Made by a program: the position numbers and the translations under genes. From NCBI RefSeq assembly GCF_031769215.1, contig NW_026782437.1, positions 620,001 through 684,000 of the forward strand: 64,000 nt of DNA, written 5' to 3'. Of the stretch, positions 39,113 to 63,680 are shown one piece after another (position 1 is the stretch's first letter; each line of letters starts with the position of its first letter). The notes below the pieces were generated by a model. The model ran no database searches and was not told the DNA's origin. It saw only the letters and a program-made list of their open reading frames with translations. The DNA comes from Ylistrum balloti (Eukaryota).

Positions 39113-41080
39113 CAATGATAATGCCACTAACCTCCTGTTTTCATCTTTACATTACAGATGTACTTTACCAATCCTTCTGCACATTACACAAATGCAGTAT
39201 CAAGGTCAAATACTTTCTCTGCATTCCTAATACATGTGATTTAATACATTTCTAGAAGTACTAATATTATTCCAAGATCAGAGTAATTAGTAAGTTACCG
39301 GAAAAAAAACTGTAGGAAATTATTGTAAAAAATAATTTAGTGAACAAAATCTATGATATGTTGATAAAACATTAAAAATGGCACGAGAAGGAATTTTCCA
39401 CTATTTCAGCTGTGATTAGTGTTAGAACATTACAAATGCAAATTGCTTCCTTACCATTTCAGCTGTGAGAAGCTTTTCAAGTTCATCTTTATGTTGTGTA
39501 CAAAGCTCTGCCCATTTTCTGAGAATACTACTTCTTTCCTAGAAACAGAATAATACATGTGTTGAGCGTTCTCCATCCAAAGTACATGGTTCAATGCCCC
39601 CTCCCTACCCCACTCCTGTGGCAGGTTGAATTTCTAAGGCAGTAAAGAAACAGATCAGTTTATGCCTTAAGAGGTGGTGTTCTAGAGAAAGACACTGTAT
39701 CCCATTTACTCTGTTATTCAGTAACATAACTTCCATCCACTCCAAGGAGGCCATGCCTCTAAATGACACTGGCTATTGGTGGGGAAATAAAACATGCAAA
39801 TACAAATACTCACTACATTCTTACTAAAATCTAAAATGATACAATATTTTACTAATTACATATCACTATATCTAGATACTAACCCTGGCTGTGGTTTCCT
39901 TCCACGTCTGAAACGCCTTGTAAGCCACCTTTATTGCTTCCTCTGTGTCCTGGGCATCCATGTCAGGGACGCTCCCTATCACTCCACCTGTCGATGGATT
40001 GACCACTACAAACAAGGTATTTAAAAAATTACATAACATCATTGGTCTTTCTTAGTTGACAAGGAAAACGTGACTTAAATCTTTGTTATGTATATCTTGA
40101 TTATGATATAAAGATCAATCGATTTTGGAAATAAATGGAAAACAAAGATGTCTGACTGGCTTCTCAGCATTCTTGGTACTTTGAGGTTACAATCACTTCC
40201 ATTCACTGCACCCCTGGAATAGATCCTGGCAAAACTGAAGGCTCAGGAGAGCTAATTTCATTGGTCTAGAGCAAGTTTCAAGAGAAAAAACTGACCAAGC
40301 ACAGTCTGATATGCTTTTTTGAAGATTACAAAAGACCAACACCCAACTTTAAAGTGAGCACACCATACCATTATATAATCTCGATTAAAGGATTAAACTA
40401 GTCTTCTCGTCTTATCCATAATGTGTCACTTCTTAAAAGATTGAAAATGTATTCTTATTTCTCATATCTTAATGGCTATTTTCTTCAATTAAGCTTGGTG
40501 AAAAAAATGTATTAATTATGAATTGATGCAAGATATCTCATATGTAAAACATCTCCAAAAAGTCTAATGCATCTCATTATCATTATACTGACTTACAAGT
40601 AAGGAAGATAACAGTATGATACCTGATGTAACATACAAGACATTTCAGTTCTATATTTTTCCATTTATAGAAGTACAATATATTTAATGTGTCATGTTGA
40701 ATTATAAACAGGCTGCGTACCTTGAAAAGTTTTCCCACTGGCAGCAGGAATCCATTTCCCATCAATGAATGCATTTTCATGCATGAATGAACTAGCATTC
40801 CTTGTAACCCCAGCTGTTGCAGCTGGTACTCTGTCCATCCTTAGTTGGTGGAGCGTTAAGGCTACAGAATGAAATTTCCTAAACAAAAAAGGCTGTAAAG
40901 GAGAAGTGAAAACATTTACATCAAATGCAACCTAAATTAGTAAATAAATGAAATGAAGACAAAACAAATACAATTGAAGAACCTTATACTATTTCTACCA
41001 AGTTTGACAGATATAAGAAACATGTCTATTAATGAAAGGATGATGGTCCGATATAATCGATTATCTAATAGTTGATTGAT

Positions 41081-44000
41081 CAGTTGTACCTTAATATTTT
41101 AGCAAAAACCAAAATTGTAACTTGGCATAATAAAGATGTCAATTGCCAATAATATTCATTCTTATACAAATTCTTGGTAAGCGAGATATTTCGTTTAAAG
41201 GTTCAAGAAATGAAATATTAATTCCATGCAGAATGCATTCATTTTCTATGAAAATTAACACACAGTCAGGTGAATAATTATGTGATCGATTAAATACATA
41301 AAAAGATCTATCCAATTTCAACAGATAATTGATTATTGATTTTAACCAATACCCCATCTCCAACATCGTATTCTTCCTTCAGTCCTGCATGTTGGTAAAC
41401 ATTGCCCAAAATGGAAGAGTATGTCTCACTCTGTTGTATATTCGTGGTGAAGAAAGTATGCTAATATTCAAATTTGTTATATGTATATTTGAATCTATCA
41501 GACTTTCAATCGATACTGATTTATTGCCAAATCCTAAGCAGTTCTAAGGACATGTAATAGCAATTCTTTTTCCTATTATTCGTTTTTCAAATATTGAGCT
41601 TTTGAATTGTATACATGTCAATCTACTTGTAATATTTACGATGGAATGTATATTAAAGTACATTTTACATGTATCCTTGTGTTTCCAAGTGACCAATGTT
41701 TTATGCACAACACTTTGATAGCCGATCCATTACATTACAGATAACGTTAGCCTGCATACCGAAGAAATCTGCAGTCTTAATTGTTTTGATCAATATCACT
41801 GATAAATTATGCTGAATTCGCTCATACTATAAGTGATAATTCCGCATTTCGCCTCATTTACTAACTAAACTACTATAGCAGACTTTTTCTTCTTTACGTA
41901 CAGGTCACTAACTATCTTCCAAAAGATTGATACAAACCATGATGTGAAAACTGATCCCTACATGTCCACGCTGCGATACTGGGGAACATATCTCATGATA
42001 TAATCTAATATGGAAGCCTCTTATCAGTATACGTGTAACAGGATATTAAAAAACTAAAAAACTGAAAAAGTTAGAGTAGTTTCCCTTATACCAGACCGAG
42101 CCCATCCTAGAGGGTTTGTCATGAGCTGCGTACTTGCCTGTCGATCAAAAGGGGATATTACTGAATCCATGAATACAAAAAAATATTTTGGAATAAATGT
42201 CACCTCGGATGAAATTTGACAGTAAAATGGTACTACTTACTGGTATACATTCAGCATTTCAGATTTAAGATTTATTTGCAAAATATTTTTGAACTTTCTT
42301 TAATTTCGTTTCCATTATCAAATTGTGTTGTTTTCACTTCAACAAAAACAAGATACTGACTACATCTTGTTTGTGATTAGGAGAGTTGGACAAAACACAA
42401 CATAAAGCAGATTTCTGATATTGTCGCTTTTTATTGTTGGATCAGAAATATAAATATTTCTGTAATAGATGAAGATATCATAGTATACATTCTCTACGTG
42501 TTTATTTTATTGGCTTCAGCTAAGATATGTCATTGGTCTCTACATCTAATGTAATACTTACAAATCTAAATCTTCATATATATATGGTGCTTGATATAAT
42601 GATAGTGGATTACCATACAACCATCAATTGCACAGTCATTTTGAGACTAGAAATAATATCTGGCTAATAAACTACATCTGTTTACACATGGTTTATAAAA
42701 TGGATACAAATTCTATATGACTTTCGTAACCTCTCATTACTTATATTAAAAAGCATGGTTCTACATGTATGTGTTTAAGATGACAATTCTGTATTTGTTT
42801 TTTTTAGACTGCTTATGCTACATAACTAATGTCCACTTTCAATCTAACTGGCTCTTGACACTTCTATAAAAAGACGAGGCACAAAGCAGATTACTAATTA
42901 TTTTTCTGATATTTTACATATAGGAATTTATATATAGCATATTTCACATAGACCTCATTCACAAATTACATTCAGCAATTAAGATATAATCAATTACCCT
43001 TTCCCAATATAAGAATATTTTACATAATCATCATCTTTGCATGAAAAATTTGGCGTGCAACAGCAATTGCCATTTTGAAATAAAAGTACACATTCAGCAA
43101 CTCGCAACAAGCACTTGACTTCTATAAACACCAACTTTACTAAAAATATGGAAATGGTTTCATTTTGATTAATGAATACTTCTTCATTAGGTACATTGTA
43201 TAACACAAACAACTCTTGCATCTACTCACATACACAACTATTTGATTTAGAGGTACTCATTGATTCAGTACTGCTGTCTCTACCAGGTTGTAGTTAATTT
43301 AAAAATATATATCTAAGCAGAGATGTATAATTCACAGTCTATATTCCACCCAGCTGTACCTTAATATTTTCTTGTGTTTTAGCAAAAACAAAATTGTTAT
43401 TAAGCATAATAGAGATGTCAATTGCCAATAATATTCATTCTTATGCAAATTCTTGGAAAACGACATATTTGGCGTTAAAGGTACAAGAAATAAAATATTA
43501 ATTCCATGCAGAATGCATTCACTTTCTATGAAAATTAACACACAGTCAGGTGAATAATTACATGTATGTGATCGATTAAATACACCAGAAAACCTATTCA
43601 ATTTCAACAGATAATTGATTATTGATTTTAACCAATACCCCATCTCCAACATCCGTATTGTTCCTTCAGTCCTGCATGTTGGTAAACATTGCCCAAAATG
43701 GAAGAGTGTGTCTCAATCTGTTGTATATTCGTGGTGAAGAAAGTATGCTAACATTCAAATTTGTTATATGTAAATTTGAATCTATCAGACTTTCAATCGA
43801 TACTGATTTATTGCCAAATCCTAAGCAGTTCTAAGGACATGTAATAGCAATTCTTTTTCCTATTATTCGTTTTTCAAATATTGAGCTTTTGAATTGTATA
43901 CATGTCGATCTACTTGTAATATTTAAGATGGAATGTATATTAAAGTACATTTTACATGTATCCTTGTGTTTCCAATTGACCAATGTTTTATGCACAACAC

Positions 44001-47000
44001 TTTGATAGCCGATCCATTACAGATAACGTTAGCCTGCATACTGAAGAAATCTGCAGTCTTAATTGTTTTGATCAATATCACTGATAAATTATGCTGAATT
44101 CGCTCATACTATAAGTGATAATTCCGCATTTCGCCTCATTTACTAACTAAACTACTATAGCAGACTTTTTCTACTTTACGTACAGGTCACTAACTATCTT
44201 CCAAAAGATTGATACCAACCATGATGTGAAAACTGATCCCTACACGTCCAAGCTGCGATACTGGGGAAAATATCTCATAATATAATCTAATATGGAAGCC
44301 TGTTATCAGTACACGTGTAACAGGATATTAAAAAATTAAAAAACTGAAAAAGTTAGAGTAGTTTCCCTTTAAACCAGACCGAGCCCATCCTAGAGGGTAT
44401 GTCATGAGCTGCGTACTTGCCTGTCGATCAAAAGGGGATATTACTGAATCCATGAATACAAAAAAATATTTTGGAATAAATGTCACCTCGGATGAAATTT
44501 GACAGTAAAATGATACTACTTACTGGTATACATTCAGCATTTCAGATTTAAGATTTATTTGCAAAATATTTTTGAACTTTCTTTAATTTCGTTTCCATTA
44601 TCAAATTGTGTTGTTTTCACTTCAACAAAAACAAGATACTGACTACATCTTGTTTGTGATTAGGAGAGTTGGACAAAACACAACATAAAGCAGATTTCTG
44701 ATATTGTCGCTTTTTATTGTTGGATCAGAAATATAAATATTTCTGTAATAGATGAAGACATCATAGTATACATTCACCACATGTTTATTTTATTGGCTTC
44801 AGCTAAGATAAGCCCTTGGTTTCTATATCTAATGTAATACTTACAAATCTAAAAATTCATCTATATATGGTGCTTGATATAATGATAGTGGATTACCATA
44901 CAACCATCAATTGCACAGTCATTTTGAGACTAGAAATAATATCTGGCTAATAAACTACATCTGTTTACACATGGTTTATAAAATGGATACAAATTCTATA
45001 TGACTTTCGTAACCTCTCATTACTTATATTAAAAAGCATGGTTCTACATGTATGTGTTTAAGATGACAATTCTGTATTTGTTTTTTTTAGACTGCTTATG
45101 CTACATAACTAATGTCCACTTTCAATCTAACTGGCTCTTGACACTTCTATAAAAAGACGAGGCACAAAGCAGATTACTAATTATTTTTCTGATATTTTAC
45201 ATATAGGAATTTATATATAGCATATTTCACATAGACCTCATTCACAAATTACATTCAGCAATTAAGATATAATCAATTACCCTTTCCCAATATAAGAATA
45301 TTTTACATAATCATCATCTTTGCATGAAAAATTTGGCGTGCAACAGCAATTGCCATTTTGAAATAAAAGTTCACATTCAGCAACTCGCAACAAGCACTTG
45401 ACTTCTATAAACACCAACTTTACTAAAAATATGGAAATGGTTTCATTTTGATTAATGAATACTTCTTCATTAGGTACATTGTATAACACAAACAACTCTT
45501 GCATCTACTCACATACACAACTATTTGATTTAGAGGTACTCATTGATTCAGTACTGCTGTCTCTACCAGGTTGTAGTTAATTTAAAAAATATATATCTAA
45601 GCAGAGATGTATAATTCACAGTCTATATTCCACCCAGCTGTACCTTAATATTTTCTTGTGTTTTAGCAAAAACAAAATTGTTATTAAGCATAATAGAGAT
45701 GTCAATTGCCAATAATATTCATTCTTATGCAAATTCTTGGTAAACGACATATTTGGCGTTAAAGGTACAAGAAATAAAATATTAATTCCATGCAGAATGC
45801 ATTCACTTTCTATGAAAATTAACACACAGTCAGGTGAATAATTACATGTATGTGATCGATTAAATACACCAGAAAACCTATTCAATTTCAACAGATAATT
45901 GATTATTGATTTTAACCAATACCCCATCTCCAACATCCGTATTGTTCCTTCAGTCCTGCATGTTGGTAAACATTGCCCAAAATGGAAGAGTGTGTCTCAA
46001 TCTGTTGTATATTCGTGGTGAAGAAAGTATGCTAACATTCAAATTTGTTATATGTAAATTTGAATCTATCAGACTTTCAATCGATACTGATTTATTGCCA
46101 AATCCTAAGCAGTTCTAAGGACATGTAATAGCAATTCTTTTTCCTATTATTCGTTTTTCAAATATTGAGCTTTTGAATTGTATACATGTCGATCTACTTG
46201 TAATATTTAAGATGGAATGTATATTAAAGTACATTTTACATGTATCCTTGTGTTTCCAATTGACCAATGTTTTATGCACAACACTTTGATAGCCGATCCA
46301 TTACAGATAACGTTAGCCTGCATACTGAAGAAATCTGCAGTCTTAATTGTTTTGATCAATATCACTGATAAATTATGCTGAATTCGCTCATACTATAAGT
46401 GATAATTCCGCATTTCGCCTCATTTACTAACTAAACTACTATAGCAGACTTTTTCTACTTTACGTACAGGTCACTAACTATCTTCCAAAAGATTGATACC
46501 AACCATGATGTGAAAACTGATCCCTACACGTCCAAGCTGCGATACTGGGGAAAATATCTCATAATATAATCTAATATGGAAGCCTCTTATCAGTACACGT
46601 GTAACAGGATATTAAAAAATTAAAAAACTGAAAAAGTTAGAGTAGTTTCCCTTTAAACCAGACCGAGCCCATCCTAGAGGGTATGTCATGAGCTGCGTAC
46701 TTGCCTGTCGATCAAAAGGGGATATTACTGAATCCATGAATACAAAAAAATATTTTGGAATAAATGTCACCTCGGATGAAATTTGACAGTAAAATGATAC
46801 TACTTACTGGTATACATTCAGCATTTCAGATTTAAGATTTATTTGCAAAATATTTTTGAACTTTCTTTAATTTCGTTTCCATTATCAAATTGTGTTGTTT
46901 TCACTTCAACAAAAACAAGATACTGACTACATCTTGTTTGTGATTAGGAGAGTTGGACAAAACACAACATAAAGCAGATTTCTGATATTGTCGCTTTTTA

Positions 47001-50000
47001 TTGTTGGATCAGAAATATAAATATTTCTGTAATAGATGAAGACATCATAGTATACATTCACCACATGTTTATTTTATTGGCTTCAGCTAAGATAAGCCCT
47101 TGGTTTCTATATCTAATGTAATACTTACAAATCTAAAAATTCATCTATATATGGTGCTTGATATAATGATAGTGGATTACCATACAACCATCAATTGCAC
47201 AGTCATTTTGAGACTAGAAATAATATCTGGCTAATAAACTACATCTGTTTACACATGGTTTATAAAATGGATACAAATTCTATATGACTTTCGTAACCTC
47301 TCATTACTTATATTAAAAAGCATGGTTCTACATGTATGTGTTTAAGATGACAATTCTGTATTTGTTTTTTTTAGACTGCTTATGCTACATAACTAATGTC
47401 CACTTTCAATCTAACTGGCTCTTGACACTTCTATAAAAAGACGAGGCACAAAGCAGATTACTAATTATTTTTCTGATATTTTACATATAGGAATTTATAT
47501 ATAGCATATTTCACATAGACCTCATTCACAAATTACATTCAGCAATTAAGATATAATCAATTACCCTTTCCCAATATAAGAATATTTTACATAATCATCA
47601 TCTTTGCATGAAAAATTTGGCGTGCAACAGCAATTGCCATTTTGAAATAAAAGTTCACATTCAGCAACTCGCAACAAGCACTTGACTTCTATAAACACCA
47701 ACTTTACTAAAAATATGGAAATGGTTTCATTTTGATTAATGAATACTTCTTCATTAGGTACATTGTATAACACAAACAACTCTTGCATCTACTCACATAC
47801 ACAACTATTTGATTTAGAGGTACTCATTGATTCAGTACTGCTGTCTCTACCAGGTTGTAGTTAATTTAAAAAATATATATCTAAGCAGAGATGTATAATT
47901 CACAGTCTATATTCCACCCAGCTGTACCTTAATATTTTCTTGTGTTTTAGCAAAAACAAAATTGTTATTAAGCATAATAGAGATGTCAATTGCCAATAAT
48001 ATTCATTCTTATGCAAATTCTTGGTAAACGACATATTTGGCGTTAAAGGTACAAGAAATAAAATATTAATTCCATGCAGAATGCATTCACTTTCTATGAA
48101 AATTAACACACAGTCAGGTGAATAATTACATGTATGTGATCGATTAAATACACCAGAAAACCTATTCAATTTCAACAGATAATTGATTATTGATTTTAAC
48201 CAATACCCCATCTCCAACATCCGTATTGTTCCTTCAGTCCTGCATGTTGGTAAACATTGCCCAAAATGGAAGAGTGTGTCTCAATCTGTTGTATATTCGT
48301 GGTGAAGAAAGTATGCTAACATTCAAATTTGTTATATGTAAATTTGAATCTATCAGACTTTCAATCGATACTGATTTATTGCCAAATCCTAAGCAGTTCT
48401 AAGGACATGTAATAGCAATTCTTTTTCCTATTATTCGTTTTTCAAATATTGAGCTTTTGAATTGTATACATGTCGATCTACTTGTAATATTTAAGATGGA
48501 ATGTATATTAAAGTACATTTTACATGTATCCTTGTGTTTCCAATTGACCAATGTTTTATGCACAACACTTTGATAGCCGATCCATTACAGATAACGTTAG
48601 CCTGCATACTGAAGAAATCTGCAGTCTTAATTGTTTTGATCAATATCACTGATAAATTATGCTGAATTCGCTCATACTATAAGTGATAATTCCGCATTTC
48701 GCCTCATTTACTAACTAAACTACTATAGCAGACTTTTTCTACTTTACGTACAGGTCACTAACTATCTTCCAAAAGATTGATACCAACCATGATGTGAAAA
48801 CTGATCCCTACGTCCAAGCTGCGATACTGGGGAAAATATCTCATAATATAATCTAATATGGAAGCCTCTTATCAGTACACGTGTAACAGGATATTAAAAA
48901 ATTAAAAAACTGAAAAAGTTAGAGTAGTTTCCCTTTAAACCAGACCGAGCCCATCCTAGAGGGTATGTCATGAGCTGCGTACTTGCCTGTCGATCAAAAG
49001 GGGATATTACTGAATCCATGAATACAAAAAAATATTTTGGAATAAATGTCACCTCGGATGAAATTTGACAGTAAAATGGTACTACTTACTGGTATACATT
49101 CAGCATTTCAGATTTAAGATTTATTTGCAAAATATTTTTGAACTTTCTTTAATTTCGTTTCCATTATCAAATTGTGTTGTTTTCACTTCAACAAAAACAA
49201 GATACTGACTACATCTTGTTTGTGATTAGGAGAGTTGGACAAAACACAACATAAAGCAGATTTCTGATATTGTCGCTTTTTATTGTTGGATCAGAAATAT
49301 AAATATTTCTGTAATAGATGAAGACATCATAGTATACATTCACCACATGTTTATTTTATTGGCTTCAGCTAAGATAAGCCCTTGGTTTCTATATCTAATG
49401 TAATACTTACAAATCTAAAAATTCATCTATATATGGTGCTTGATATAATGATAGTGGATTACCATACAACCATCAATTGCACAGTCATTTTGAGACTAGA
49501 AATAATATCTGGCTAGTAAACTACATCTGTTTACACATGGTTTATAAAATGGATACAAATTCTATATGACTTTCGTAACCTCTCATTACTTATATTAAAA
49601 AGCATGGTTCTACATGTATGTGTTTAAGATGACAATTCTGTATTTGTTTTTTTTAGACTGCTTATGCTACATAACTAATGTCCACTTTCAATCTAACTGG
49701 CTCTTGACACTTCTATAAAAAGACGAGGCACAAAGCAGATTACTAATTATTTTTCTGATATTTTACATATAGGAATTTATATATAGCATATTTCACATAG
49801 ACCTCATTCACAAATTACATTCAGCAATTAAGATATAATCAATTACCCTTTCCCAATATAAGAATATTTTACATAATCATCATCTTTGCATGAAAAATTT
49901 GGCGTGCAACAGCAATTGCCATTTTGAAATAAAAGTTCACATTCAGCAACTCGCAACAAGCACTTGACTTCTATAAACACCAACTTTACTAAAAATATGG

Positions 50001-52460
50001 AAATGGTTTCATTTTGATTAATGAATACTTCTTCATTAGGTACATTGTATAACACAAACAACTCTTGCATCTACTCACATACACAACTATTTGATTTAGA
50101 GGTACTCATTGATTCAGTACTGCTGTCTCTACCAGGTTGTAGTTAATTTAAAAAATATATATCTAAGCAGAGATGTATAATTCACAGTCTATATTCCACC
50201 CAGCTGTACCTTAATATTTTCTTGTGTTTTAGCAAAAACAAAATTGTTATTAAGCATAATAGAGATGTCAATTGCCAATAATATTCATTCTTATGCAAAT
50301 TCTTGGTAAACGACATATTTGGCGTTAAAGGTACAAGAAATAAAATATCAATTCCATGCAGAATGCATTCACTTTCTATGAAAATTAACACACAGTCAGG
50401 TGAATAATTACATGTATGTGATCGATTAAATACACCAGAAAACCTATTCAATTTCAACAGATAATTGATTATTGATTTTAACCAATACCCCATCTCCAAC
50501 ATCCGTATTGTTCCTTCAGTCCTGCATGTTGGTAAACATTGCCCAAAATGGAAGAGTGTGTCTCAGTCTGTTGTATATTCGTGGTGAAGAAAGTATGCTA
50601 ACATTCAAATTTGTTATATGTATATTTGAATCTATCAGACTTTCAATCGATACTGATTTATTGCCAAATCCTAAGCAGTTCTAAGGACATGTAATAGCAA
50701 TTCTTTTTCCTATTATTCGTTTTTCAAATATTGAGCTTTTGAATTGTATACATGTAGATCTACTTGTAATATTTAAGATGGATTGTATATTAAAGTACAT
50801 TTTACATGTATCCTTGTGTTTCCAAGTGACCAATGTTTATGCACAACACTTTGATAGCCGACCCGTTACAGATAACGTTAGCCTGCATACTGAAGAAATC
50901 TGCAGTCTTAATTGTTTTGATCAATATCACTGATAAATTATGCTGAATTCGCTCATACTATAAGTGATAATTCCGCATTTCGCCTCATTTACTAAGTAAA
51001 CTACTATAGCAGACTTTTTCTACTTTACGTACAGGTCACTTACTATCTTCCAAAAGATTGATACCAACCATGATGTGAAAACTGATCCCTACACGTCCAA
51101 GCTGCGATACTGGGGAAAATATCTCATAATATAATCTAATATGGAAGCCTCTTATCAGTATACGTGTAACAGGATATTAAAAAATTAAAAAACTGAAAAA
51201 GTTAGAGTAGTTTCCCTTAAAACCAGACCGAGCCCATCCTAGAGGGTATGTCATGAGCTGCGTACTTGCCTGTCGATCAAAAGGGGATATTACTGAATCC
51301 ATGAATACAAAAAAATATTTTGGAAAAAATGTCACCTCGGATGAAATTTGACAGTAAAATGGTACTACTTACTGGTATACATTCAGCATTTCAGATTTAA
51401 GATTTATTTGCAAAATATTTTTGAACTTTCTTTAATTTCGTTTCCATTATCAAATTGTGTTGTTTTCACTTCAACAAAAACAAGATACTGACTACATCTT
51501 GTTTGTGATTAGGAGAGTTGGACAAAACACAACATAAAGCAGATTTCTGATATTGTCGCTTTTTATTGTTGGATCAGAAATATAAATATTTCTGTAATAG
51601 ATGAAGACATAATAGTATACATTCACCACATGTTTATTTTATTGGCTTCAGCTAAGATATGTCATTGGTCTCCATATCTAATGTAATACTTACAAATCTA
51701 AATCTTCATCTATATATGGTGCTTGATATAATGATAGTGGATTACCATACAACCATCAATTGCAAAGTCATTTTGAGACTAGAAATAATATCTGGCTAAT
51801 AAACTACATCTGTTTACACATGGTTTATAAAATGGATACAAATTCTATATGACTTTCGTAACCTCTCATTACTTATATTAAAAAGCATGGTTCTACATTG
51901 TATGTATGTATTTAAGATGACAATTCTGTATTTGTTTTTTAGACTGCTTATGCTACATAACTAATGTCCAATTTCAATCTAACTGGCTCTTGACACTTCT
52001 ATAAAAAGATGAGGCACAAATCAGATTACTAATTCTTTTCCTGATATTTTACATATAGGAATTTATATATAGCATATTTCACATAGACCTCATTCACAAA
52101 TTACATTCAGCAATTAAGATATAATCAACTACCCTTTCCCAATATAAGAATTTTTTACATAAGCACCATCTTTGCATGAAAAATTTGGCGTGCAACAGCA
52201 ATTGCCATTTTGAAATAAAAGTTCACATTCAGCAACTCGCAACAAGCACTTGACTTCTATAAACACCAACTTTACTAAAAATATGGAAATGGTTTCATTT
52301 TGATTAATGAATACTTCTTCATTAGGTACATTGTATAACAACTCTTGCATCTACTCACATACACAACTATTTGATTGATTTAGTACTGTTTTCGCTAAAA
52401 TGTTTTAGTTAATCTGAAAATATATATCTAAGTACATATTTATGATTCAGTCTATATTCC
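41081..52460. repeat. Five tandem ~2.28-kb copies of the SSADH inter-copy spacer (5' flank + 3' flank) joined by four gene-deletion junctions
   Basis: Junction tctatattccacc-ca-gctgtacc at 43351, 45635, 47919, 50201 (periods 2284, 2284, 2282); the same short ORFs recur in the track at that period. Confidence 0.95.
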
Positions 52461-55400
52461 ACCCATACACACATATTTGAGGTGGAGGTATTCATCAATG
52501 CCATATTTACTGCCCTCACTCCCGAGACCGGATTCCTTCCAGCCTCCAAATGGAGATTCTGGGACAGACACTAATCCCTCGTTGACTCCTACAATGCCCG
52601 TTTCCAGCTGCTCAGCCACACGCCAGATCTGACTGAGGTTTTGGGAGAAGAAGTACCCTGGAAAGTGGAAAGAAGTTAGTGTTAGTGGAACATTAGGCTA
52701 TCATTTAGACAACTGTACACTTTATAAGTTCATAAATTTTAATCCACTTTCTAAAGTCAAAATTGAAAATTAGGCATGTCACTTTACAGAATGTTAAGTT
52801 TGTTTAAATTTTCACACCACACTTTGATCTGTGCTGTGTTGGGTAAGGAATCCTGTGAATATTGGCATGGTTAAACTGAACACTGGTAATGAATTTCTCC
52901 TATTTGTTGAATTGTTATGAACATTTACATTCAATAATGAGATTATTTTCATTTTGTTTTAAATATCTTTCACAGATCAGCTTGGTTAAGTTACTTCATA
53001 GCTCTTTTCTCAAAACAAATTAACAAAAGTTGAATGGTTCAAGAAATATTAACATTAGCATTCAGATAAAGGACTGGTTTTTGCTACAACTTGACCTTTT
53101 TTGACAATTTTTTATCAAACAAAAATATTTTTTGTTGGTTTCATCTGACTTCGTTTCAATATGCAAAAAATATCATTGCATCATTTTAGATTGATGATAC
53201 GCCTTTAATTAACCTGCCTGATGATTTAAATTGATGAGGGTTTCTGCATTAATGGGCATTACATAGGGCAGGATATTAAATAGATGGAGTAAAAAAGGCT
53301 AAATCATGAAAAAAGTATGTTGTAATAAAATTATCACAAACCTGCCAAACCTGATGATGTAACATTTGCTATCGCAACTGCTTCCTCCTCCGTTTTAAAT
53401 CTGTAAAAAAAAAATTTTCAATCAAACTTATCTTCATTCCTGGTCTACTACCTATCTCTTTTTTTATTATGTTGCTATATTTTCCATATTTTGGTCATTT
53501 AAGCATCAGTGATGAGTTTTAGAAGGACAAAAACAGCTGTATGATGCTGTTTTAATTCATCATTTGACTCTACTTTATCTAAGGCTACATTTGTATTGTG
53601 TTCTTTACTTGTGTCTTTTGTACAATCTTACATTTCCATTCAATCTTTATTATATGATCAAGAGAAATATTGTAGAATTGTAAAATTCAATGGGGATTTT
53701 TATTAATTTAATTTGTGGATCCTTATATCCAAGAATTTACCACAAGCTAATAAATTAGTACAGGTAGATTTATTGAGCTATATTTGTCCATGAAATCAAG
53801 TGTCCAAAATTTTTTTTTCTAAAAAATCACAAAACTATATGATTTTACACTATAACACAATCTACAATTTGAATACCAAGACATATCTGTGGAAGATACC
53901 TGGTATCACAAAAAGCTTTTGAAGTTCAAAAGCTAATTTACAAGGTATAACAGAGTTGTGTAATGATTTATGGCATGTGCGAGATTTAGGTATATGTTAA
54001 GATTCTGTTATATGTGTACTTACTTCAAAATAGGAGCAACAGGTCCAAATGTCTCCTCAGATGAGCACCTCATTTCCTGTGTTACATGTGATAGAAGGGT
54101 GGGAAGGAAGAAGTTTCCGTCCAGCCTCTTACCTCCCCTGACAACAGTAGCCCCTTTAATCACAGCATCATCCACATGGCCCTGGACCTGAGACCATATA
54201 GAAAGCAAAGAATAGCAATATATCATAAGGAACTATTATACCATGAAGGTTAATCAGTTACTCAAAACATTAAATATGATGACTTTTTTGTGAGAACATA
54301 TTAAAAGGTACAGTACTTTTGAATTACTACTATTTACCAAAAATATCTGTAAACAACAGACAGAGTGGTATTGTAGTTTCCAACCTTTCAATAATAAGTT
54401 GTAAAACAAATGCTCAAAAATGACCACAGGGACAGCACAAATTCCCAGCACATAGTCCAGATATATGTATCATAATCACTTTTATACATATAAATGGATT
54501 ATGGGATGAGAAATTGTGCAAAGGAACAAGACATAAGTAAGGACCAAATAGAGTTGATCACCCTTGCAATAGACTACATACCCTTTGGAAAAGTCTAAAT
54601 AAAACTACTACCCAACTCACTAATTGTGGTTTACTTCCAGTAATATTCAAAGCAATACCTTGTCTACTGCTTTACTGTTGATCAATGGGCCTTGTGTGGT
54701 ACCATCCTCAAACCCGTCTCCCACTTTGAGTTCCCGGTCCATGGTTTCCGCTACTTTCTGTACAAACTTATCATAGATCCCCTCCTGAACCAGAATCCGA
54801 TTGGCACACACGCAGGTCTGCACCAAGTACATCATAAATGTCTTAATTAATACACAGTAGAATCATTATTTTTTTTATCAGTTGTAACATTTTTACAAAG
54901 AACAGTATATTTAGTTCAATTACAATTGTCGAGTATTGTCCAAATGAAAGCCATTGCAGCACACAGTGTAAATAACTGACCAATCTATTACCTCAGAAAG
55001 ATGAACTAGCATAATATTTATGAACACCATTTCAATACATAATACAACATAACCCAACATATCTGAATATTATTTGATCCTCCTTCATAAATTTCATAAC
55101 ATAAATCTAACTTCCATACCTGTAATTTGACTTGAAACTTACCTGACCAGAAACCCTAAACTTACAGCCCATCAGTCCCTTGACAGCTGCATCAACATCA
55201 GCACTGTCAAACACAATAAAGGGGGCGTTTCCTCCCAGCTCAAGGGAAACTTTCTTCACAGTGGACGCTGATTGCTCCAACAAAATCTGAATAAAAATCT
55301 CAGTAATTTACGAGAAAGTTTGTACCCATGCAAAATCAAATTGTAATTTGTGAAATATGATTTAAAGAAGTTCTCAAAAATAACGTTCATTATTTGCTGA

Positions 55401-58400
55401 ATTTGACAAAATATTTTCAAATGACTATCTAATTAATGATATAGACTTACCTTGCCAACTTGGGTGGAACCTGTGAATGAGATCTTCATAACCAGCGGAT
55501 GTTTACACAGCATTTTTCCCACCTCAGCAGCATGGTCTCGGGATGAAGTTACTACATTCAGAACACCTGGGGGCATTCCAGCCATAGACGCTAACTAGAG
55601 AAACGTAGAAATAAAATCTTTTCTGCACCACACATCACACAGGTGTGCAATGATCACAAAGTTTTGACACATTTACAATACTCTGAAATTTTCATGGTCT
55701 TACCTATTGCCCAGAAGACATGAAATGGATTATTGTTTCCTAATGGTAAATCTAGTTTCAAAGTGTCTTTATTTACAGTTATATCCAATCCTAAAAATGA
55801 GTGAACAAGAGGTCCATAGGGCAGGTATAACTCACCTGGTTTAGTTTGCTGAAAATGATTAAAATTAAACTTCAAAAGATGTATTTAAATTACCTGGTAC
55901 ATCTATTTCCCCTTTCAGACACCACCCCTCTGCCTCCAGGGGGTTAAATGCAAATTTGGATCAAATTTGGATATCATTGAATCATTTCAACAGAGGGAGG
56001 AATTTAAAGAATTTGCTTTGTCTCCACTATTGGGCCCCGCCCCTACTGCAGCCCCAGGGGGTTAAAACCCACTGTTTATACCTTCGTGCAATCATGCCTC
56101 AGACAAAATCAAGAAGAACAATATCAAGATTTTGCCCTATTTTCCTAATTTGGTGCAGCTCTTCCCATCCAATGGAGCAGAAACAAACTGTTCATGCAAA
56201 ATTGATTTCCCTTCCCCCAATAATGCTTCAGATCAAACCTGGGCAAAATCAGGACATTTCTGCAGGAGGAATAGGATTTCAAAGACTTTGCTCTAATTCC
56301 CCTATTGGCCCTTCTGGCCTGGTGAGCTACAAAGTTCAAGTGTCTCTTTTCACAATATTATCCCATCTTTGAAATAGCGAAATCAAAATCCCCAAAAATA
56401 ACATCCTTGACGTACCTCACACAGGGCAAGGGCTGAGTAAGGGGTGTCCTCAGCAGGCTTCAGTACTACAGTACAGCCTGCTGCAATGGCTGCACAGGCC
56501 TTTCGAGTTATCATAGCATTGGGGAAATTCCACTAAAAGACAAAAACAAATTTTACAAGCAATTTCTCTATAAAATCAGCATCAAACTGTTTACTGGAAA
56601 GTTAAATATTGATATGAACTTATTTAATATTTTTATCAACAACTGATTCGATGAGATACTACTGTAATGATATAATAAATCTTGTTTTATAAAGTTATTG
56701 GAAAATCATATTCATAGCAACAAATGCATTTTACCGGAGTGATCATGCCAGCAACACCCAATGGTTGTTTGAGGACAAGCATGCGACGTGTATTGGTTGT
56801 AGTTGGGATAATGTCTCCATACACTCTCCGGGCTTCCTCAGCAAACCATTCTATGAATGCTGTGCCATAAGCCACTTCTCCCGCTGCCTCTGCAAGAGGC
56901 TTGCCCTAGATTATACAAAAAACAAGGTCAAGGTCAGGGACTTCAATAAATTACACAAGTACAATGTAAAAATACCAAGGGATTCCCCAAGATAGCATAA
57001 AATGAAAAAAGAAACAATCCCAAAATTTCAAAAAAAATTTACAGAAATATCTCATGAAGACATAAAGCTCAATGTAAGAGTCAGAGGCTTACCCTAGATT
57101 CTAAAGTGTCAAGGTCATGGTCCGGTCTAGATTACTTAAATACAATGCCAAGGTCACTAACCTCCTATAGCTTATCTGTGTCACCATTTCAGCTGTGTCA
57201 GAACACTACAACTGCAAATTTTATCATTTTGACCTATTCTGATTATCTATACTAACATTATTTTCTTACCATTTCAGCTGTGAGAAGCTTTGCTAGTTCA
57301 TCTTTATGTTGTGTACAAAGCTCTGCCCATTTTCTGAGAACACCACTTCTTTCCTAGAAACAGAATAATACATGTGTTGAGCGTTCACCTATGTAACCTC
57401 AGGTGACCTTCCAAAGTGTATGGTTCAATGGTTCCATCTTCCCATGGCAGTTTGTATATCTCAGAATGCTAAGAAACAGATCGGTGTATACCGGTGAGGT
57501 AGTGTTTTTGAGCAAGAGATTGTATCTCATTCACTCTTTGACTAGCCTTTCGTAAGTTGTTCAGTAACATAACCTCCAACCACACCAAGGAGGCCCTGCC
57601 TTAAAATGACACTGGCTATTGGTGAGGTAATAAAACCAGCAAACAAATTCTCACTACATTGAACTCTTTTAACAATATATATATATATATATCATTTCTT
57701 ATTGAATAATCATCTCCACTTGCCAGAAAATCTTCTTACTAAAATGATACAATATATGACTATTTACATACATATCACAATATCATGATACTAACCCTGG
57801 CTGTGGTTTCCTTCCACGTCTGAAACGCTTTGTAAGCCACCTTTATTGCTTCCTCTGTGTCCTGGGCATCCATGTCAGGGACACTTCCTATCACTCCACC
57901 TGTTGACGGATTGATCACTACAAACAAAGATATTAAAAAAAATTATTTAAAACATGATTTAAATCTTTGTTATGTATATCTTGATAATGATAGGAAGATC
58001 AATCGATTTTGCAAATAAATGAAAAACAAAGATGTCTGACTGGTTTCTCAGCATTCTTGGTACATTGAGGTTACAATCAATTCCATTCTCTGTACTCCTT
58101 GAGCATTTCCTGGCAAAACTAAAGTGCAGGAGAATTAATTTCATAGGTCTATCACAAGTTTTAGGAGAAAAAAATTGACCAATCACAGACTAATATGCTC
58201 CTTTGAAGATTTCAAAAGACCAACACACAACTTCAAAGTCAGCACACCATATCATTATGCAACCTTGATTAAAGAATTAAACTAGTCTTCTTGTCTTATC
58301 CATAAGGTGTCACTCCTCAAAAAATTGAAAATGTATTCTTATTTCTCAAATCTTAATGGCCATTTTCTTCAATAAAGGTTGGTTAAATGGAGAATGTTGT

Positions 58401-59055
58401 AATTATGAGCTTTTTGGAATATTTCAAGTTTGTTTGTCAAAGACTACTTACAATGCAATCTACCACAAACTTACTTGCATGATACTGCATGAACGAAATA
58501 TGCTATGTACCCAAGACAGTACCTATTTAGAACATTTCAAATATTTATAACAAATTTTTTTTCAACAATTTTGATAAACTCAGTCTATCTATATCAAGAA
58601 AAAGCATATAAAATTTTCATAACTATAGGTAAAATTTATCCTGCTTAGGAACAAGATTCATAATCTTTGCTCTGGGATGCAATGAAAGTTCAGGGTAAAT
58701 TTCTCTTAATACAGCAGTTAACAATCTTATTAAATGTTGTCATTCATGCGAGTCATGTCGATTATCCCACTTGGTATATATCACTTTACATTTTTGATGT
58801 GTATTAATTTATATTGTTGCACTGACTAATGTGTCATGTTGAATTATAAACGGGCTGCATACCTTGAAAAGTTTTCCCACTGGCAGCAGGAACCCATTTC
58901 CCATCAATGAATGCATTTTCATGCTTGAATGAACTGGCATTCCTGGTAACCCCAGCTGTTGCAGCTGGTACTCTGTCCATCCTTAGTTGGTGGAGTGTAA
59001 AGACTGTGATTCTCTTGTGATGTTGACCGATTACAGAATGAAATTTCCTAAACAT
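52452..59055 (-). CDS. ALDH5A1: Succinate-semialdehyde dehydrogenase (mitochondrial-type) copy 2, intact, ~520 aa
   Basis: Exons (-): 59055-58863, 57917-57796, 57353-57270, 56905-56735, 56532-56416, 55594-55451, 55286-55143, 54817-54659, 54187-54024, 53400-53342, 52657-52452 (1563 nt), all GT-AG. Basic leader [25 protein letters not shown]; catalytic Glu (LELGG) and Cys (GQTCVC). An acceptor lies 6 nt before the ATG, so an upstream exon exists that I could not place. Confidence 0.92.
53502..53548 (+). pseudogene. Degenerate hammerhead ribozyme, paralogue of 35100-35145
   Basis: Same stems, but the core reads GTGATGA and GAAA is replaced by AAAAA. Confidence 0.7.
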
Positions 59056-60798
59056 AAAAGACTGAAAAAGAGAAGAGAAAACATTTACATCAAATACAGT
59101 AAATAAACTATCAAATAAATTAAATGAAGACAAAACAAATACGATTGAAGAACCTTATACTATTTCTACCAAGTTTGACAGATATAAGAAACATGTCCAT
59201 TAATGATAGTTTAACCTCATGTGATATAAAGATCAAGTATAATTTTTCATGATTTGTCAGCAGTACCTGAATATTTCCTTGTGTTTTAGCAAAAACAAAA
59301 TTGATATTTAGCATAAAAAAGATGTCAATTGCCAATGATATTTATTCTGATGTGAATTCTTGGTAAGCGAGATATTTCGTGTTAAAGTTGCAAGAAATGA
59401 GATATTACTTCCATGTAGAATGCATTCACTTTCTATGAAAATTAACACACAGTCAGGTGAATAATTATGTGATCGATTAACTACATCAAAAAATCTATCC
59501 AACTTCAACAGATTATTGATTATTGATTTTAACCAATACCCCATCTCCAACATCCATATTCTTCCTTCAGTTTTGTATGTTGGTAAACATTGCCCGAAAT
59601 GTAAGAGTATGCCTCATTCTGTTGTACATTCAAATTTGTTATATATTTGAATCTATCAAACTTTCAATCGATACCGATTTATTGCCAAATCCCAAGCAGT
59701 TCTAAGTACATGTAATAGCAATTCTTTTCCCTATCATTCGTTTTTTAAATATTGAGCTTTTGAATTGTATACATGTCAATCTACTTGTAATATTTACGAC
59801 GGAATGTACGTGAAAGTACATTGTACATGTATCCTTGTGAGACAAACTGACCATGCTTTATGCTCAACACTTTAATAGCCGATCCATTACAGATAACGTT
59901 AGCCTACAGGCTACATACTGAAGAAATCTGTAATCTAAAATGTCTTGATCAATAGCCTTTTGATAAATTATGCTTATTTCGCTAAGACTATACATGATAA
60001 TTCCGCAGTTCGCCTCATTTACTAACTCAATATCATAGAAGACTATTTTCTACTTTCATTTTCATTACGTACAGATCACTGACTATCTTCTAAAAGGTCG
60101 ATACAAACCATGTTGTGAAAACTGGTGTCTACGAGACCTCGATGTCACACTTCTGAAATTTCCCTTGCGATAGTCACGCTTGACATGTCATCTCATTACA
60201 TATTGACAAAATCTAATATTAAAGCCGCTTGTCGGCATACATGTGACAGGATATTAAAAAACTTAAATGTTAGAGTAGTTTCCCTTGAAACCGGAAATGA
60301 GCCCATTCTACTGGGTTTGATCTATCCATTGATTCCACGCTCAGAAGGGACACAACACATTTTTTAAAATTTCGTTTTGTTTGTTTTTATTATTATTTAT
60401 TTTTTTCTCAGCCTAAATATCTAAAATTTGAACTTCCTACTATCACTTGTTCCGTGCAAGTGTGTGGTTATTCAAAACCAGAAAAAGTACATAATATTAC
60501 AAACGTATATATGTCTATATAAGCTTCAACTGCCCTTGCGATCAAATTTAGATTGAAGTGTGATTGGAACTTCACTATCCACAATACACTTACCGCAACA
60601 CAATGAGAACTGTCGACCCCTTATTGGATTACAAAAATGATTTTGATCGAAAAATATCTTTTTAGTCTTTCATGTGGAAATAAAATCATATTTAAAATCT
60701 TGAAGAGTACAGATACATTTTACAAACATAAACGTTTGTAAAACAAGACTAGTACATAGTGTTAAAATACAGTATATGTAACTCTGATAACGGAGCAT

Positions 60799-61641: not shown

Positions 61642-61822
61642 TGACGCAAGTGTTTAGACTTACGGAGAACATTTTAAAAAGACGCAAGTGTTTAGACTTA
61701 CGGAGAACATTCAGAAAGACGCAAGTGTTTAGACTTACGGAGAACATTCAGAAAGACGCAAGTGTTCAGACTTACGGAGAACATTCAGAAAGACGCAAAT
61801 GTGTAGACCTACGGAGAAAATT
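61642..61822. repeat. 37-bp minisatellite, ~5 copies
   Basis: gacgcaagtgtttagacttacggagaacattcagaaa at 61643, 61681, 61718, 61755, 61792. Confidence 0.9.
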
Positions 61823-63049
61823 CAAAATAGAATTTTGTAATATAACAGAGAACAAACATAGATTAGTATTTCGGATGGGGACCTGAGTGGAAAAAAATGG
61901 CTTAGCCAGCAGGTTATTGTATGAAGTTTGGAAGCCACCAGAGGCAGTAATGAAAATCTTAGAAAAGAGGAGGAGTCTATTGCAGATCAGCAGCAGCATC
62001 CCAAAAGGTCTCAATCAAGTCTCCGAAATACAGGACTCAATAGTACAGAAACCATCATCGACAGCAGTAGGCAAGACAACAAGTTTATACTGACAGCTAT
62101 TCCGCATCCGATCGAACGACAAACGATGTCTCACACCGACTTCAGATGTCGAACAGAACCCAAAACCAAATTCTCAGAGGACGTGTTAAAAAGGGACCCG
62201 AAAATCGTACCAAATATTACTGTCTGTGGAATTACTCCAACCGTTTCTGGTGTAATTTAAAAGGAATATAACATACTATCATGTCATAAATTACAGCCTG
62301 TATGCGAAAGCATCTTACTATTAGAGGAACGTTCGGTTCAGTTAGATTTCAAACTAGGAACATAGTTCATCTGCAATACTTTAATAGGAAAAATATCTAA
62401 ATACAAACATAAGCAGCTGACTAAATGTCAGGATACTATTAAAGTCGTCGGTAGGACGTTTTGTCTTAGAAAAAGTCAAACATTTAAACTCAGTCAATCT
62501 AGCAAAAATGAAGAAATCAACTATGTAAGTGTCTATGTTTAACGGTTTTGTCAGATCAGACCTGCTCAAATTATGAAACATGCTAAAATCACGTAATCTT
62601 TCTTATCATTTGGTTAATGTTTGAAAATTTAAAAATACGGATCTAATAAAGTCGAAAGAATGTTCAAATACAACATAGAACCTCACTTAAATACATACAA
62701 ATGTGATAACGATATAATTGATCAGATGACTATTTTTCTTTATGAACTTTTCATGCGTAAATGAGTGGATTTAGGTTTGTCTTGGTGCGGGGACAGATTC
62801 CACAATCTCAACACAGTGATAAAAAAAGATATTTTATTCAGTAGGGAAAGGAAAAGCTTTATTCATTTATCTATTTATTTAAAACCTACAGTATGTCATC
62901 TATTTTCATCATATAGTGATAACACACGTCTTACACCCTACTTACAAGGCGTGGAAATATACTGCATTGGATTGGGACCAGCAGGACTATAGTATAGTGA
63001 GCACAGGGAGGGTAAATGCCTAGCAAAGATATGATCTCCAAAGGGACGA

Positions 63050-63680
63050 ACATCTTAAGACAAAAACCAGATTTTCCCTCCTCCCGTATCCTGTAAGACA
63101 AGTACCAGATTTGCCCTCCTTCCGTTTCCTGTAAGACAAATACCAGATTTTCTCTCCTTCCGTATACTGTAAGACAAGTACCAGACTTTCTCTCCTTTCG
63201 TATCCTGTAAGACAAATGCCAGAGTTTCCTTCTTTCCGTTTCCTGTAAGACAAATACCAGATTTCCCCTCCTTCCGTATCCTGTAATCAAGAACCATATT
63301 TCCCCTCCTTCCGTATCTTGTAAGACAAGTACCATATTTCCCCTCCTTCCGTCTACTGCAAGACAAATGCCAGACTTTCTCTCATCGTATCCTGTAAGAC
63401 AAATACCAGACTTTCTCTCCTTCCGTTTCCTGTAAGACAAGTACCAGATTTCCCCTCCTTCCGTATCCTGTAATCAAGTACCATATTTCCCCTCCTTCCG
63501 TCTACTGCAAGACAAATGGCAGACTTTCTCTCATCGTATCCTGTAAGACAAGTACCATATTTCCCCTCCTTCCGTCTACTGCAAGACAAATACCAGACTT
63601 TCTCTCATCGTATCCTGTAAGACAAGTACCAGATTTTCCCTCCTTCCGTATCCTGCAAGGTAAGTTTCAGATATCTTTCC
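63050..63680. repeat. ~38-bp minisatellite with variant units, ~16 copies
   Basis: cctgtaagacaagtaccagatttcccctccttccgtat recurs (63090, 63128 and onward); periodic ORFs on the minus strand. Confidence 0.9.

What the first reader, a model, noticed from the sequence alone, without database searches (positions are those of the whole stretch)
41081..52460. Array of gene-less SSADH units: a whole-gene deletion scar amplified four times between two paralogues
Each 2.28-kb unit is 5' flank plus 3' flank. At each junction the last codons (minus strand GGT GGA ATA TAG) are fused through a CA microhomology to sequence ~200 bp upstream of the first coding exon, removing ~7 kb (equivalent to 34117-41082). 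The 5' halves of the units carry indels distinct from both surviving genes, so a third gene copy existed. Inner units are almost identical while outer ones diverge, as expected from unequal crossover. The original duplication join is near 42120. If the promoter lies in the spacer, copy 1 now has five stacked promoter/3'-UTR/polyA cassettes upstream. These could yield short non-coding RNAs or alter expression (inference).
Basis: partly seen in the sequence, partly recalled or inferred. Interest (0 to 1): 0.7.

Follow-up and report, generated by a model that had tools for sequence, protein, structure and literature searches.

The report
Amplified gene-less spacer between SSADH paralogues
Between two intact scallop genes for succinate-semialdehyde dehydrogenase, the 2.3-kb spacer (one gene's tail flank joined to the other's upstream flank) is repeated five times; this looks like an ordinary product of one odd DNA join followed by unequal crossing-over, with no shown function.

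Summary
Window 41081-52465 is five head-to-tail units of 2265-2284 bp between two intact minus-strand SSADH (ALDH5A1-type) genes. Each unit is 5' flank, a 9-bp filler, then 3' flank. All four gene-less junctions are identical: the last four codons plus stop, a CA overlap, then sequence 195 bp upstream of the first coding exon. The three inner units are 99.8-99.9% identical. The outer units differ only on the side facing their gene, in a gradient, which is the edge effect of unequal crossing-over. Next to the junction, the inner-unit sequence is about as far from gene A's and gene B's flanks as those are from each other. So the junction is nearly as old as the gene duplication, while the last amplification is very recent.

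The claim of a lost third gene is not established. A single tandem duplication of the spacer gives the same map. Six of seven indels cited for a third copy are changes in gene A's own flank.

The units lack the proximal 194 bp, which holds a conserved TATA-like block. They do carry conserved poly(A) signals and part of a MITE.

No read data could be obtained, so copy number and transcription are untested. Earlier scan notes report similar unequal-crossover arrays elsewhere in this genome.

The parts
32829..34102 (-). 3' flank (probable 3' UTR and poly(A) region) of gene A. It is the left end of the original 9.29-kb duplicated segment and the homologue of the 3' half of every unit.
   Evidence: 93-94% identity to the units' 3' halves, with homology starting at 32829; on the gene strand there is no AATAAA in the first 820 nt after the stop. 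AATAAA then occurs at 823, 828, 899 and 1122 nt and ATTAAA at 1030 nt, conserved in all six copies.
34103..40886 (-). Gene A, an SSADH (ALDH5A1-type) gene with 11 coding exons. The stop codon is at 34103-34105. The first coding exon reaches 40886, where gene A has TTG at the position of gene B's ATG; the first in-frame ATG is at 40838.
   Evidence: Pfam Aldedh on 8 exon ORFs; the best PDB hits are human mitochondrial SSADH (2w8n/2w8p), and the C-terminus aligns to its last residue; all exons are open; start-codon positions.
40887..41080 (-). Proximal upstream 194 bp of gene A, which is absent from the gene-less units. It includes a block about 95% conserved between A and B (41004-40941) with a TATA-like TATAAG at 40988-40983, and a conserved acceptor-like pyrimidine tract plus CAG near 40893.
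41037..41362 (.). Old MITE-like dispersed repeat upstream of gene A, also present upstream of gene B at about 59196-59549. Other copies carry terminal inverted repeats AGTGATGGGA...TCCCATCACT. The junction breakpoint at 41081 lies about 45 bp inside the element, just past its left terminal repeat.
   Evidence: 213 first-look candidates in the genome at 70-79% identity; alignment of seven copies showing boundaries and inverted ends; remnant inverted arms 41053-41066 / 41323-41336.
41081..43350 (-). Unit U1 (2270 bp). It consists of gene A's own distal 5' flank, the old join and an inner-type 3' flank copy.
   Evidence: 45 of its 52 private changes lie in the left half (binomial p = 7e-8), densest in the first 250 bp.
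42119..42127 (.). J0, the join of the original 9.29-kb gene duplication. It is a 9-bp filler (TCATGAGCT) between the end of the 5' flank (equivalent to 60319) and the start of the 3' flank (equivalent to 32829). The same filler is repeated at 44402-44410, 46686-46694, 48968-48976 and 51251-51259.
43339..43352 (-). J1, the gene-less junction: stop codon plus the last four codons (43339-43350) and the CA microhomology (43351-43352), followed by upstream sequence. Identical copies end at 45636, 47920 and 50202.
   Evidence: 80-bp contexts are identical at all four junctions.
43351..50200 (-). Inner units U2 (43351-45634), U3 (45635-47918) and U4 (47919-50200). They differ from each other by 2-4 substitutions, plus a 2-bp deletion private to U4.
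   Evidence: Ten columns are shared by U2-U4 against U1 = U5. The private variants are not homopolymer-type.
50201..52465 (-). Unit U5 (2265 bp). It consists of an inner-type 5' flank copy, the old join and gene B's own 3' flank.
   Evidence: 34 of its 43 private changes lie in the right half (p = 2e-4), densest next to gene B.
52452..59055 (-). Gene B, the second intact SSADH paralogue. The stop codon is at 52452-52454 and the ATG at 59055-59053.
59056..60319 (-). 5' flank of gene B, forming the right end of the original duplicated segment. It served as the outgroup for the units' 5' halves.

Best explanation
This is a low-copy tandem array of an intergenic spacer, made and maintained by ordinary recombination.

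Proposed history:
1. A 9.29-kb segment (3' flank, SSADH gene, 5' flank) duplicated in tandem through a non-homologous join with a 9-bp filler (J0).
2. Not long afterwards, a second non-homologous join with 2 bp of microhomology (J1) linked the last codons of an SSADH copy to a point 195 bp upstream of an SSADH copy. That point lies inside an old MITE. The result was a second spacer with no gene in it. The simplest route is a 2.28-kb tandem duplication of the spacer itself. A 7-kb deletion of a third gene copy gives the same product.
3. [quoted passage not shown] The edges that abut the genes were left diverged.
4. Very recently this process raised the number of units to five.

Each extra unit adds a copy of the probable 3' UTR with its poly(A) signals and about 1 kb of distal upstream DNA. 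It does not add the proximal 194 bp. The most likely effect is none or slight: more distance and more terminators between gene B and gene A.

What is shown: the map, the single origin of J1, the gradients and the relative ages. What is inferred: the mechanisms, the neutrality and the true copy number in the animal.
For: Map and identities.

Junctions: the four J1 junctions and the five J0 joins are identical.

Edge gradients: U1-private events fall 45 left and 7 right of the unit midpoint; U5-private events fall 9 left and 34 right.

Relative ages at the 5' side:
- First 300 columns: U1-inner 26/284 (9.2%), against U1-B flank 31/284 and inner-B flank 30/294.
- Columns 451-900: U1-inner 6/425, against about 50/423 to the B flank.

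Relative ages at the 3' side:
- Last 150 columns: inner-U5 15/127, inner-A flank 10/143, U5-A flank 14/129.
- Three sampled interior windows (columns 301-450, 601-750, 1051-1200): inner-U5 about 2/447, inner-A flank 23/446.

The inner units differ by only 2-4 substitutions, plus a 2-bp deletion private to U4. Apart from the MITE part, the unit is unique to this locus in the 648.5-Mb assembly, and only two SSADH C-terminal exons exist in the genome. Centre-homogenised, edge-diverged arrays are the known signature of unequal exchange (PMC5411766, citing McAllister & Werren 1999).
Against: No reads could be examined, so the number of near-identical inner units could be inflated or haplotype-specific. 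The long survival of a 2-5-copy array, with a junction nearly as old as the paralogues, is not what a fast neutral gain-and-loss walk most readily predicts, and might hint at selection. Two bases of microhomology are weak evidence for any particular joining mechanism; roughly 1 random join in 6 would show 2 bp or more (my estimate). The edge distances rest on 10-30 differences each.
Confidence: 0.72

Rival explanations
1. A three-gene array (A, C, B) once existed. A 7-kb microhomology deletion removed the body of gene C, from -195 to its fifth-last codon, and the scar-bearing spacer was later amplified.
For: The junction edges form a third lineage about as old as the A/B split, as expected if C arose early. 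Unequal crossover between tandem paralogues readily makes triplications. One 6-bp insertion (TACATG) is private to the inner units.
Against: It needs one more event than a spacer-only duplication and predicts the same map and the same affinities (5' edge from the A side, 3' edge from the B side). No interior gene remnant survives; only 14 nt of the last exon remain. Six of the seven indels invoked are derived in gene A's flank, while the inner units keep the state shared with B. No third SSADH copy exists elsewhere in the genome.
Confidence: 0.3
2. Assembly over-expansion. The animal carries fewer units, for example U1, one inner unit and U5, and the three 99.9%-identical inner units are an assembler or haplotype-merging artefact.
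For: Inner units 99.8-99.9% identical over 6.85 kb are the kind of repeat that assemblers miscount. Bivalve genomes are highly heterozygous. An earlier scan note on another locus of this genome (s1-232075) raised the same doubt.
Against: The inner units carry distinct non-homopolymer variants, including one shared by the adjacent units U2 and U3 only. Ten columns separate all inner units from both U1 and U5, so at least one inner unit, and hence two J1 junctions, must be real. There are no gaps in the window, and an 11.4-kb array is within long-read length.
Confidence: 0.18
3. A functional regulatory array. The units act as stacked upstream enhancers or alternative promoters for gene A, as extra terminators insulating gene A from read-through out of gene B, or they yield short non-coding RNAs or a junction-spanning 106-aa ORF product.
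For: The junction has persisted for about as long as the paralogues. A 167-bp block about 94-95% conserved between A and B (41653-41487) lies inside every unit. Poly(A) signals are conserved in all six 3' flanks. An ATG-initiated 106-aa ORF crosses each junction. rDNA spacers give a precedent for duplicated promoters in spacers (PMC1215480).
Against: There is no expression data. The proximal 194 bp with the TATA-like block is missing from the units. No Rfam family matches in 32-61 kb. The ORF starts in MITE-derived sequence, has no exact match in the protein collection, and is only 75 aa upstream of gene A.
Confidence: 0.1

Closest known systems
Low-copy tandem segmental duplications and macrosatellite-like arrays evolving by unequal crossing-over (Smith 1976 model; edge effect of McAllister & Werren 1999, as cited in PMC5411766)
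   Same: The units are kilobase-sized and head-to-tail, and all share one junction. The centre is homogenised and the edge copies diverged. Expansion is recent.
   Different: There are only five copies. The unit is not a gene or a satellite but the spacer between two paralogues, with a join that exactly skips the gene. Copy-number polymorphism was not tested.
rDNA intergenic-spacer repeats carrying duplicated promoters and terminators (e.g. Drosophila IGS, PMC1215480)
   Same: Upstream-flank and terminator-side sequence of a tandemly repeated gene is itself repeated inside the spacer, upstream of the next gene.
   Different: These are Pol II protein-coding genes. The units here lack the proximal 194 bp where the core promoter probably lies, and no spacer transcription is shown. 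This is a functional analogy only.
Reciprocal products of unequal crossover in tandem paralogues (globin and opsin-type deletions and triplications; other arrays noted in this same scallop genome, s1-262850 and s1-258859)
   Same: The same genomic setting of tandem paralogues, with repeated non-allelic exchange.
   Different: Those events recombine within homologous gene sequence and give hybrid or extra genes. Here the founding join is non-homologous (2-bp overlap) and the amplified piece has no gene.
Microhomology-mediated tandem duplication or deletion (NHEJ/MMEJ or replication template switching such as FoSTeS/MMBIR)
   Same: J1 has 2 bp of microhomology and J0 has a 9-bp filler. Both are typical of end joining or template switching.
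   Different: The mechanism cannot be identified from the sequence alone. The MITE hairpin idea for the breakpoint was not supported (z = -0.73).

Membership tests
Tandem array evolving by unequal crossover | Head-to-tail copies of constant period sharing one junction (single origin) | tested here: met
   Five units of 2265-2284 bp. The four J1 junctions are identical over 80 bp and the five J0 fillers are identical.
Tandem array evolving by unequal crossover | Interior copies homogenised, edge copies diverged on their outer side | tested here: met
   U2-U4 are 99.8-99.9% identical. U1-private events fall 45 left and 7 right; U5-private events fall 9 left and 34 right. Divergence drops from about 9-14% at the edges to about 1% inside.
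Tandem array evolving by unequal crossover | Copy number varies between haplotypes or individuals | not testable with these tools
Whole-gene deletion scar of a third paralogue | The junction joins a gene's 3' end to its own upstream region in the same orientation | tested here: met
   The last four codons plus stop are fused to -195. A spacer-only duplication produces the same junction.
Whole-gene deletion scar of a third paralogue | Evidence for a third gene that a spacer-only duplication cannot explain (interior remnants, or a 3' edge derived from A rather than B) | tested here: inconclusive
   No interior remnant exists. The edge sequences give a star-like three-lineage pattern. The apparent excess on U5's branch is one cluster of 8 substitutions in about 20 bp plus a 14-bp deletion. 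Indel polarity mostly points to changes in gene A's flank.
Spacer-promoter or terminator repeats (rDNA-IGS-like) | Each repeat contains a copy of the gene's core promoter | tested here: inconclusive
   The promoter is not mapped. The proximal 194 bp with the conserved TATA-like block is absent from the units, while a distal conserved block (41653-41487) is present.
Spacer-promoter or terminator repeats (rDNA-IGS-like) | Transcripts start or end in the repeats | not testable with these tools
   No RNA runs could be reached.
SSADH / ALDH5A1 (flanking genes) | Aldedh domain along the whole gene, closest to SSADH among the ALDHs, with the catalytic Cys and Glu motifs present | tested here: met
   Pfam PF00171 matched 8 exon ORFs covering profile positions 9-461. 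The best PDB matches are human SSADH 2w8n/2w8p. ELGGNAP and TCVCANR are present in both genes with no in-frame stops.
MITE (dispersed repeat at the J1 breakpoint) | Short non-coding element, many copies, terminal inverted repeats | tested here: met
   213 candidates in the genome. The element is about 330-400 bp, with ends AGTGATGGGA... / ...TCCCATCACT in aligned copies. The target-site duplication was not determined.

The most novel reading that the evidence does not exclude
The gene-less spacers are kept by selection as a tunable buffer between two same-strand paralogues. Each unit would add a full 3' UTR and poly(A) terminator plus distal upstream elements. Unit number would then set how much read-through from gene B reaches gene A, or how strongly gene A is driven. 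Alternatively, each unit would produce a short polyadenylated RNA. This would explain why a junction as old as the paralogues survives in an array that is still turning over.
Probability: 0.08. Interest if true: 0.55.

Novelty: new member of a known kind. Interest (0 to 1): 0.27.

Why it matters
This is a clean, fully dissectable example of how a tandem gene pair can grow a repeated spacer. It shows two datable non-homologous joins, a textbook edge-to-centre homogenisation gradient, and a very recent expansion. It also shows that a map resembling a deleted third gene can arise from a simple spacer duplication. That is a useful caution when copy histories are read from assemblies. If the units proved to be transcribed, or to modulate the two SSADH genes, the array would be a Pol II analogue of rDNA spacer repeats. 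Nothing here shows that.

Tried and rejected
- An exact look-up of the three junction-spanning ORF variants, gene A's 75-aa ORF and the last-exon ORF found none of them in the protein collection. There is therefore no independent confirmation of J1 from other data sets.
- TRF misses the array because its maximum period is 500.
- The idea that J1 sits at a transposon boundary was rejected. The first search suggested this only because the query began at the junction. Re-alignment shows that the MITE extends about 45-60 bp beyond the breakpoint.
- A MITE hairpin as the cause of the breakpoint was not supported. The DNA fold is no more stable than shuffled sequence (z = -0.73), and only short remnant arms remain.
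- The idea that the inner 3' edge derives from gene A's flank, which would have required a third gene, was rejected as unsupported. The signal is one mutation cluster on U5's branch.
- The idea that only the missing proximal block is highly conserved was rejected. Several blocks of 95% identity or more exist, some inside the units.
- A and B as mis-assembled alleles was rejected. They show 5-16% substitution divergence with many indels and a distinct filler join.
- No Rfam family matches in 32-61 kb.
- The large protein searches were not used.
Full report
**Structure.** A self-comparison of the window and a multiple alignment show five head-to-tail units:
- U1 41081-43350
- U2 43351-45634
- U3 45635-47918
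- U4 47919-50200
- U5 50201-52465

They lie between two larger diverged repeats, 32829-42118 and about 51260-60319. Each larger repeat holds a minus-strand gene. The window has no N. TRF does not report the array because its period limit is 500. Unit positions 1-1038 are homologous to the 5' flank of the right-hand gene (59258-60319). Positions from about 1048 to the end are homologous to the 3' flank of the left-hand gene (32829-34116). The array ends at 52465 rather than 52460.

**The genes.** Eight exon-sized ORFs of the left gene match Pfam Aldedh in collinear order, covering profile positions 9-461. The two exons I tested against solved structures hit human mitochondrial SSADH (2w8n/2w8p) best, and the last exon aligns to the very last residue of that protein. 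Exon-by-exon comparison shows 11 coding exons in both genes. All are open, and both genes keep the ELGGNAP and TCVCANR catalytic motifs. The whole 648.5-Mb assembly contains only these two SSADH C-terminal exons. I searched exons one at a time by reference. Earlier notes of this scan call the genome a scallop; I did not verify that.

**The two joins.**
- J1, the gene-less junction, reads on the plus strand CTATATTCCACC, then CA, then GCTGTACC. The first part is the stop codon and the last four codons. CA is shared by both parents. The rest is the sequence that begins 195 bp upstream of gene A's first coding exon. The 80-bp context is identical at all four junctions, so J1 arose once. The skipped stretch corresponds to 34117-41080 (6,964 bp).
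- J0, the older join that created the gene pair, is a 9-bp filler (TCATGAGCT, 42119-42127). It lies between the end of the 5' flank homology (equivalent to 60319) and the start of the 3' flank homology (equivalent to 32829). It is the same in all five units.

**Divergence pattern and ages.** U2-U4 differ by 2-4 substitutions, and U4 alone has a 2-bp deletion. U1 and U5 each differ from the inner units by about 2.2-2.6%. The differences are strongly polarised. U1's private changes fall 45 to the left and 7 to the right of the unit midpoint, with 28 in the first 250 columns. U5's fall 9 left and 34 right. So U1 is gene A's own flank followed by inner-type sequence, and U5 is inner-type sequence followed by gene B's own flank.

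Distances on the 5' side:
- First 300 columns: U1-inner 26/284 (9.2%), U1-B flank 31/284, inner-B flank 30/294.
- Columns 451-900: U1-inner 6/425, against about 50/423 to the B flank.

Distances on the 3' side:
- Last 150 columns: inner-U5 15/127, inner-A flank 10/143, U5-A flank 14/129.
- Three sampled interior windows: inner-U5 about 0.4%, against about 5% to the A flank.

At the bases next to J1, the inner type is thus a third lineage nearly as old as the A/B split. Further in, the spacers have been homogenised. An exchange between misaligned units can replace everything on the inner side of the crossover point but never the outermost bases. A gradient of this shape is what unequal crossing-over predicts, and centre-homogenised arrays are well documented (PMC5411766). 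The near-identity of U2-U4 shows a very recent rise in copy number.

**Was there a third gene?** The map does not require one. If gene B's last codons on one chromatid are joined to -195 of gene A on the other, the result is gene A, spacer, J1, spacer, gene B in a single step. If the third copy arose by exchange between A and B, it predicts the same origins for both edges. The indel argument does not help. With gene B's flank as outgroup, six of the seven indels separating U1 from the inner units are changes in U1, including the 10-bp gap next to the junction. Only a 6-bp TACATG insertion is private to the inner type. I looked for a signal that the inner 3' edge derives from gene A's flank, which only a third gene could explain. 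The apparent excess of changes on U5's branch is one cluster of eight substitutions in about 20 bp next to a 14-bp deletion. That is not informative. I rate the spacer-only duplication as somewhat more likely on parsimony, but the two histories cannot be separated with this sequence.

**What a unit contains.**
- The first 280-300 bp of each unit is part of an old MITE-like element. It has more than 200 candidates in the genome and inverted ends AGTGATGGGA / TCCCATCACT. It was already present upstream of the gene before J0. The J1 breakpoint lies about 45 bp inside it.
- The rest of the unit occurs nowhere else in the assembly.
- On the gene strand, the 3' flank has no AATAAA for 820 nt after the stop. 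It then has a cluster at 823-899 nt, with further signals at 1030 and 1122 nt, all conserved in the six copies. Most of the 3' half is therefore probably 3' UTR plus the poly(A) site.
- The units lack the proximal 194 bp (40887-41080). This stretch holds a block about 95% identical between A and B with a TATAAG motif at 40988-40983, and a conserved acceptor-like site near 40893.
- Another conserved block (41653-41487) is inside every unit.

Whether a unit has promoter activity is therefore open. The phrase 'five stacked promoter cassettes' goes beyond the data. What is stacked for certain is four extra copies of the 3' UTR and poly(A) region and of the distal upstream kilobase. No Rfam family matches. 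The only sizeable ORF is a 106-aa frame that starts in the MITE and crosses J1. It has no exact match in the protein collection and is probably fortuitous.

**Is the array real?** I could not examine reads. From the sequence alone, U1, the inner type and U5 differ by about 7-14% in the edge windows next to the junction. Ten columns separate all inner units from both outer ones. So at least three units and two J1 junctions must exist. The inner units carry distinct, non-homopolymer variants, one of them shared only by the neighbouring U2 and U3. That speaks for separate copies. The exact number, five, remains an assembly statement.

**Comparison and verdict.** This is a small tandem array founded by a non-homologous join and run by unequal exchange. 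Its unusual feature is that the repeated piece is the spacer between two paralogues. It works like other low-copy tandem duplications. Its layout recalls the duplicated promoter and terminator repeats of rDNA spacers (PMC1215480), but I make no claim of membership there. Similar unequal-crossover products were already noted elsewhere in this genome by this scan. The third-gene and regulatory readings are unproven. Interest is modest.

Noticed in passing
window 40884-40886 (gene A) vs 59053-59055 (gene B); 40838: Gene A has TTG where gene B has the ATG that opens MFRKFHSV.... Gene A also lacks 9 codons that are present in B's N-terminal leader. Gene A's first in-frame ATG (MDRV...) leaves only about 17 residues before the mature-looking part. 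Gene A may therefore have a shortened or lost mitochondrial presequence, unless an upstream exon supplies a start.
   Followed up: partly
window 41037-41362 and 59196-59549; loci L004-L010: A MITE-like family of about 330-400 bp with roughly 40-bp terminal inverted repeats (AGTGATGGGA...) and more than 200 candidate copies at 70-79% identity in the genome. The family was not classified and the target-site duplication was not determined.
   Followed up: partly
window 36300-36906 vs 54650-55310: Exons 7 and 8 of the two SSADH genes are 100% identical at protein level. The surrounding intron DNA is 96-99% identical, against 84-90% elsewhere, which suggests a recent gene-conversion tract between the paralogues.
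   Followed up: no
window 52455-52676 (gene B, last exon): Gene B's last exon has about 10 amino-acid changes relative to gene A, including Ser for the Arg of the conserved [10 protein letters not shown] motif.
   Followed up: no
window 38603-39400: About 800 bp present in an intron of gene A has no counterpart in gene B. This is either an insertion in A or a deletion in B. I did not check it for transposon identity.
   Followed up: no
window 42494-42596 and the same place in every unit; 33262-33365 in gene A's flank: A roughly 100-bp patch around the conserved AATAAAATAAA poly(A) signals is a mosaic. U1 and U5 share one version, the inner units have another, and gene A's flank has a third. 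This suggests short conversion tracts among the six 3' flank copies.
   Followed up: partly
window 43332-43652, 45616-45936, 47900-48220, 50182-50502 (minus strand): An ATG-initiated 106-aa ORF crosses each gene-less junction. The corresponding ORF upstream of gene A is only 75 aa. There is no exact match in the protein collection, and the ORF is probably fortuitous.
   Followed up: partly
window 14859-15334, 21633-22535, 23223-24490, 61643-61824, 63056-63803: Several unrelated minisatellite arrays occur in the window: one of about 67-bp period over 1.27 kb at 23.2-24.5 kb, a 37-bp repeat of 4.9 copies at 61.6 kb, and a 38-bp repeat of about 16 copies at 63.1 kb.
   Followed up: no
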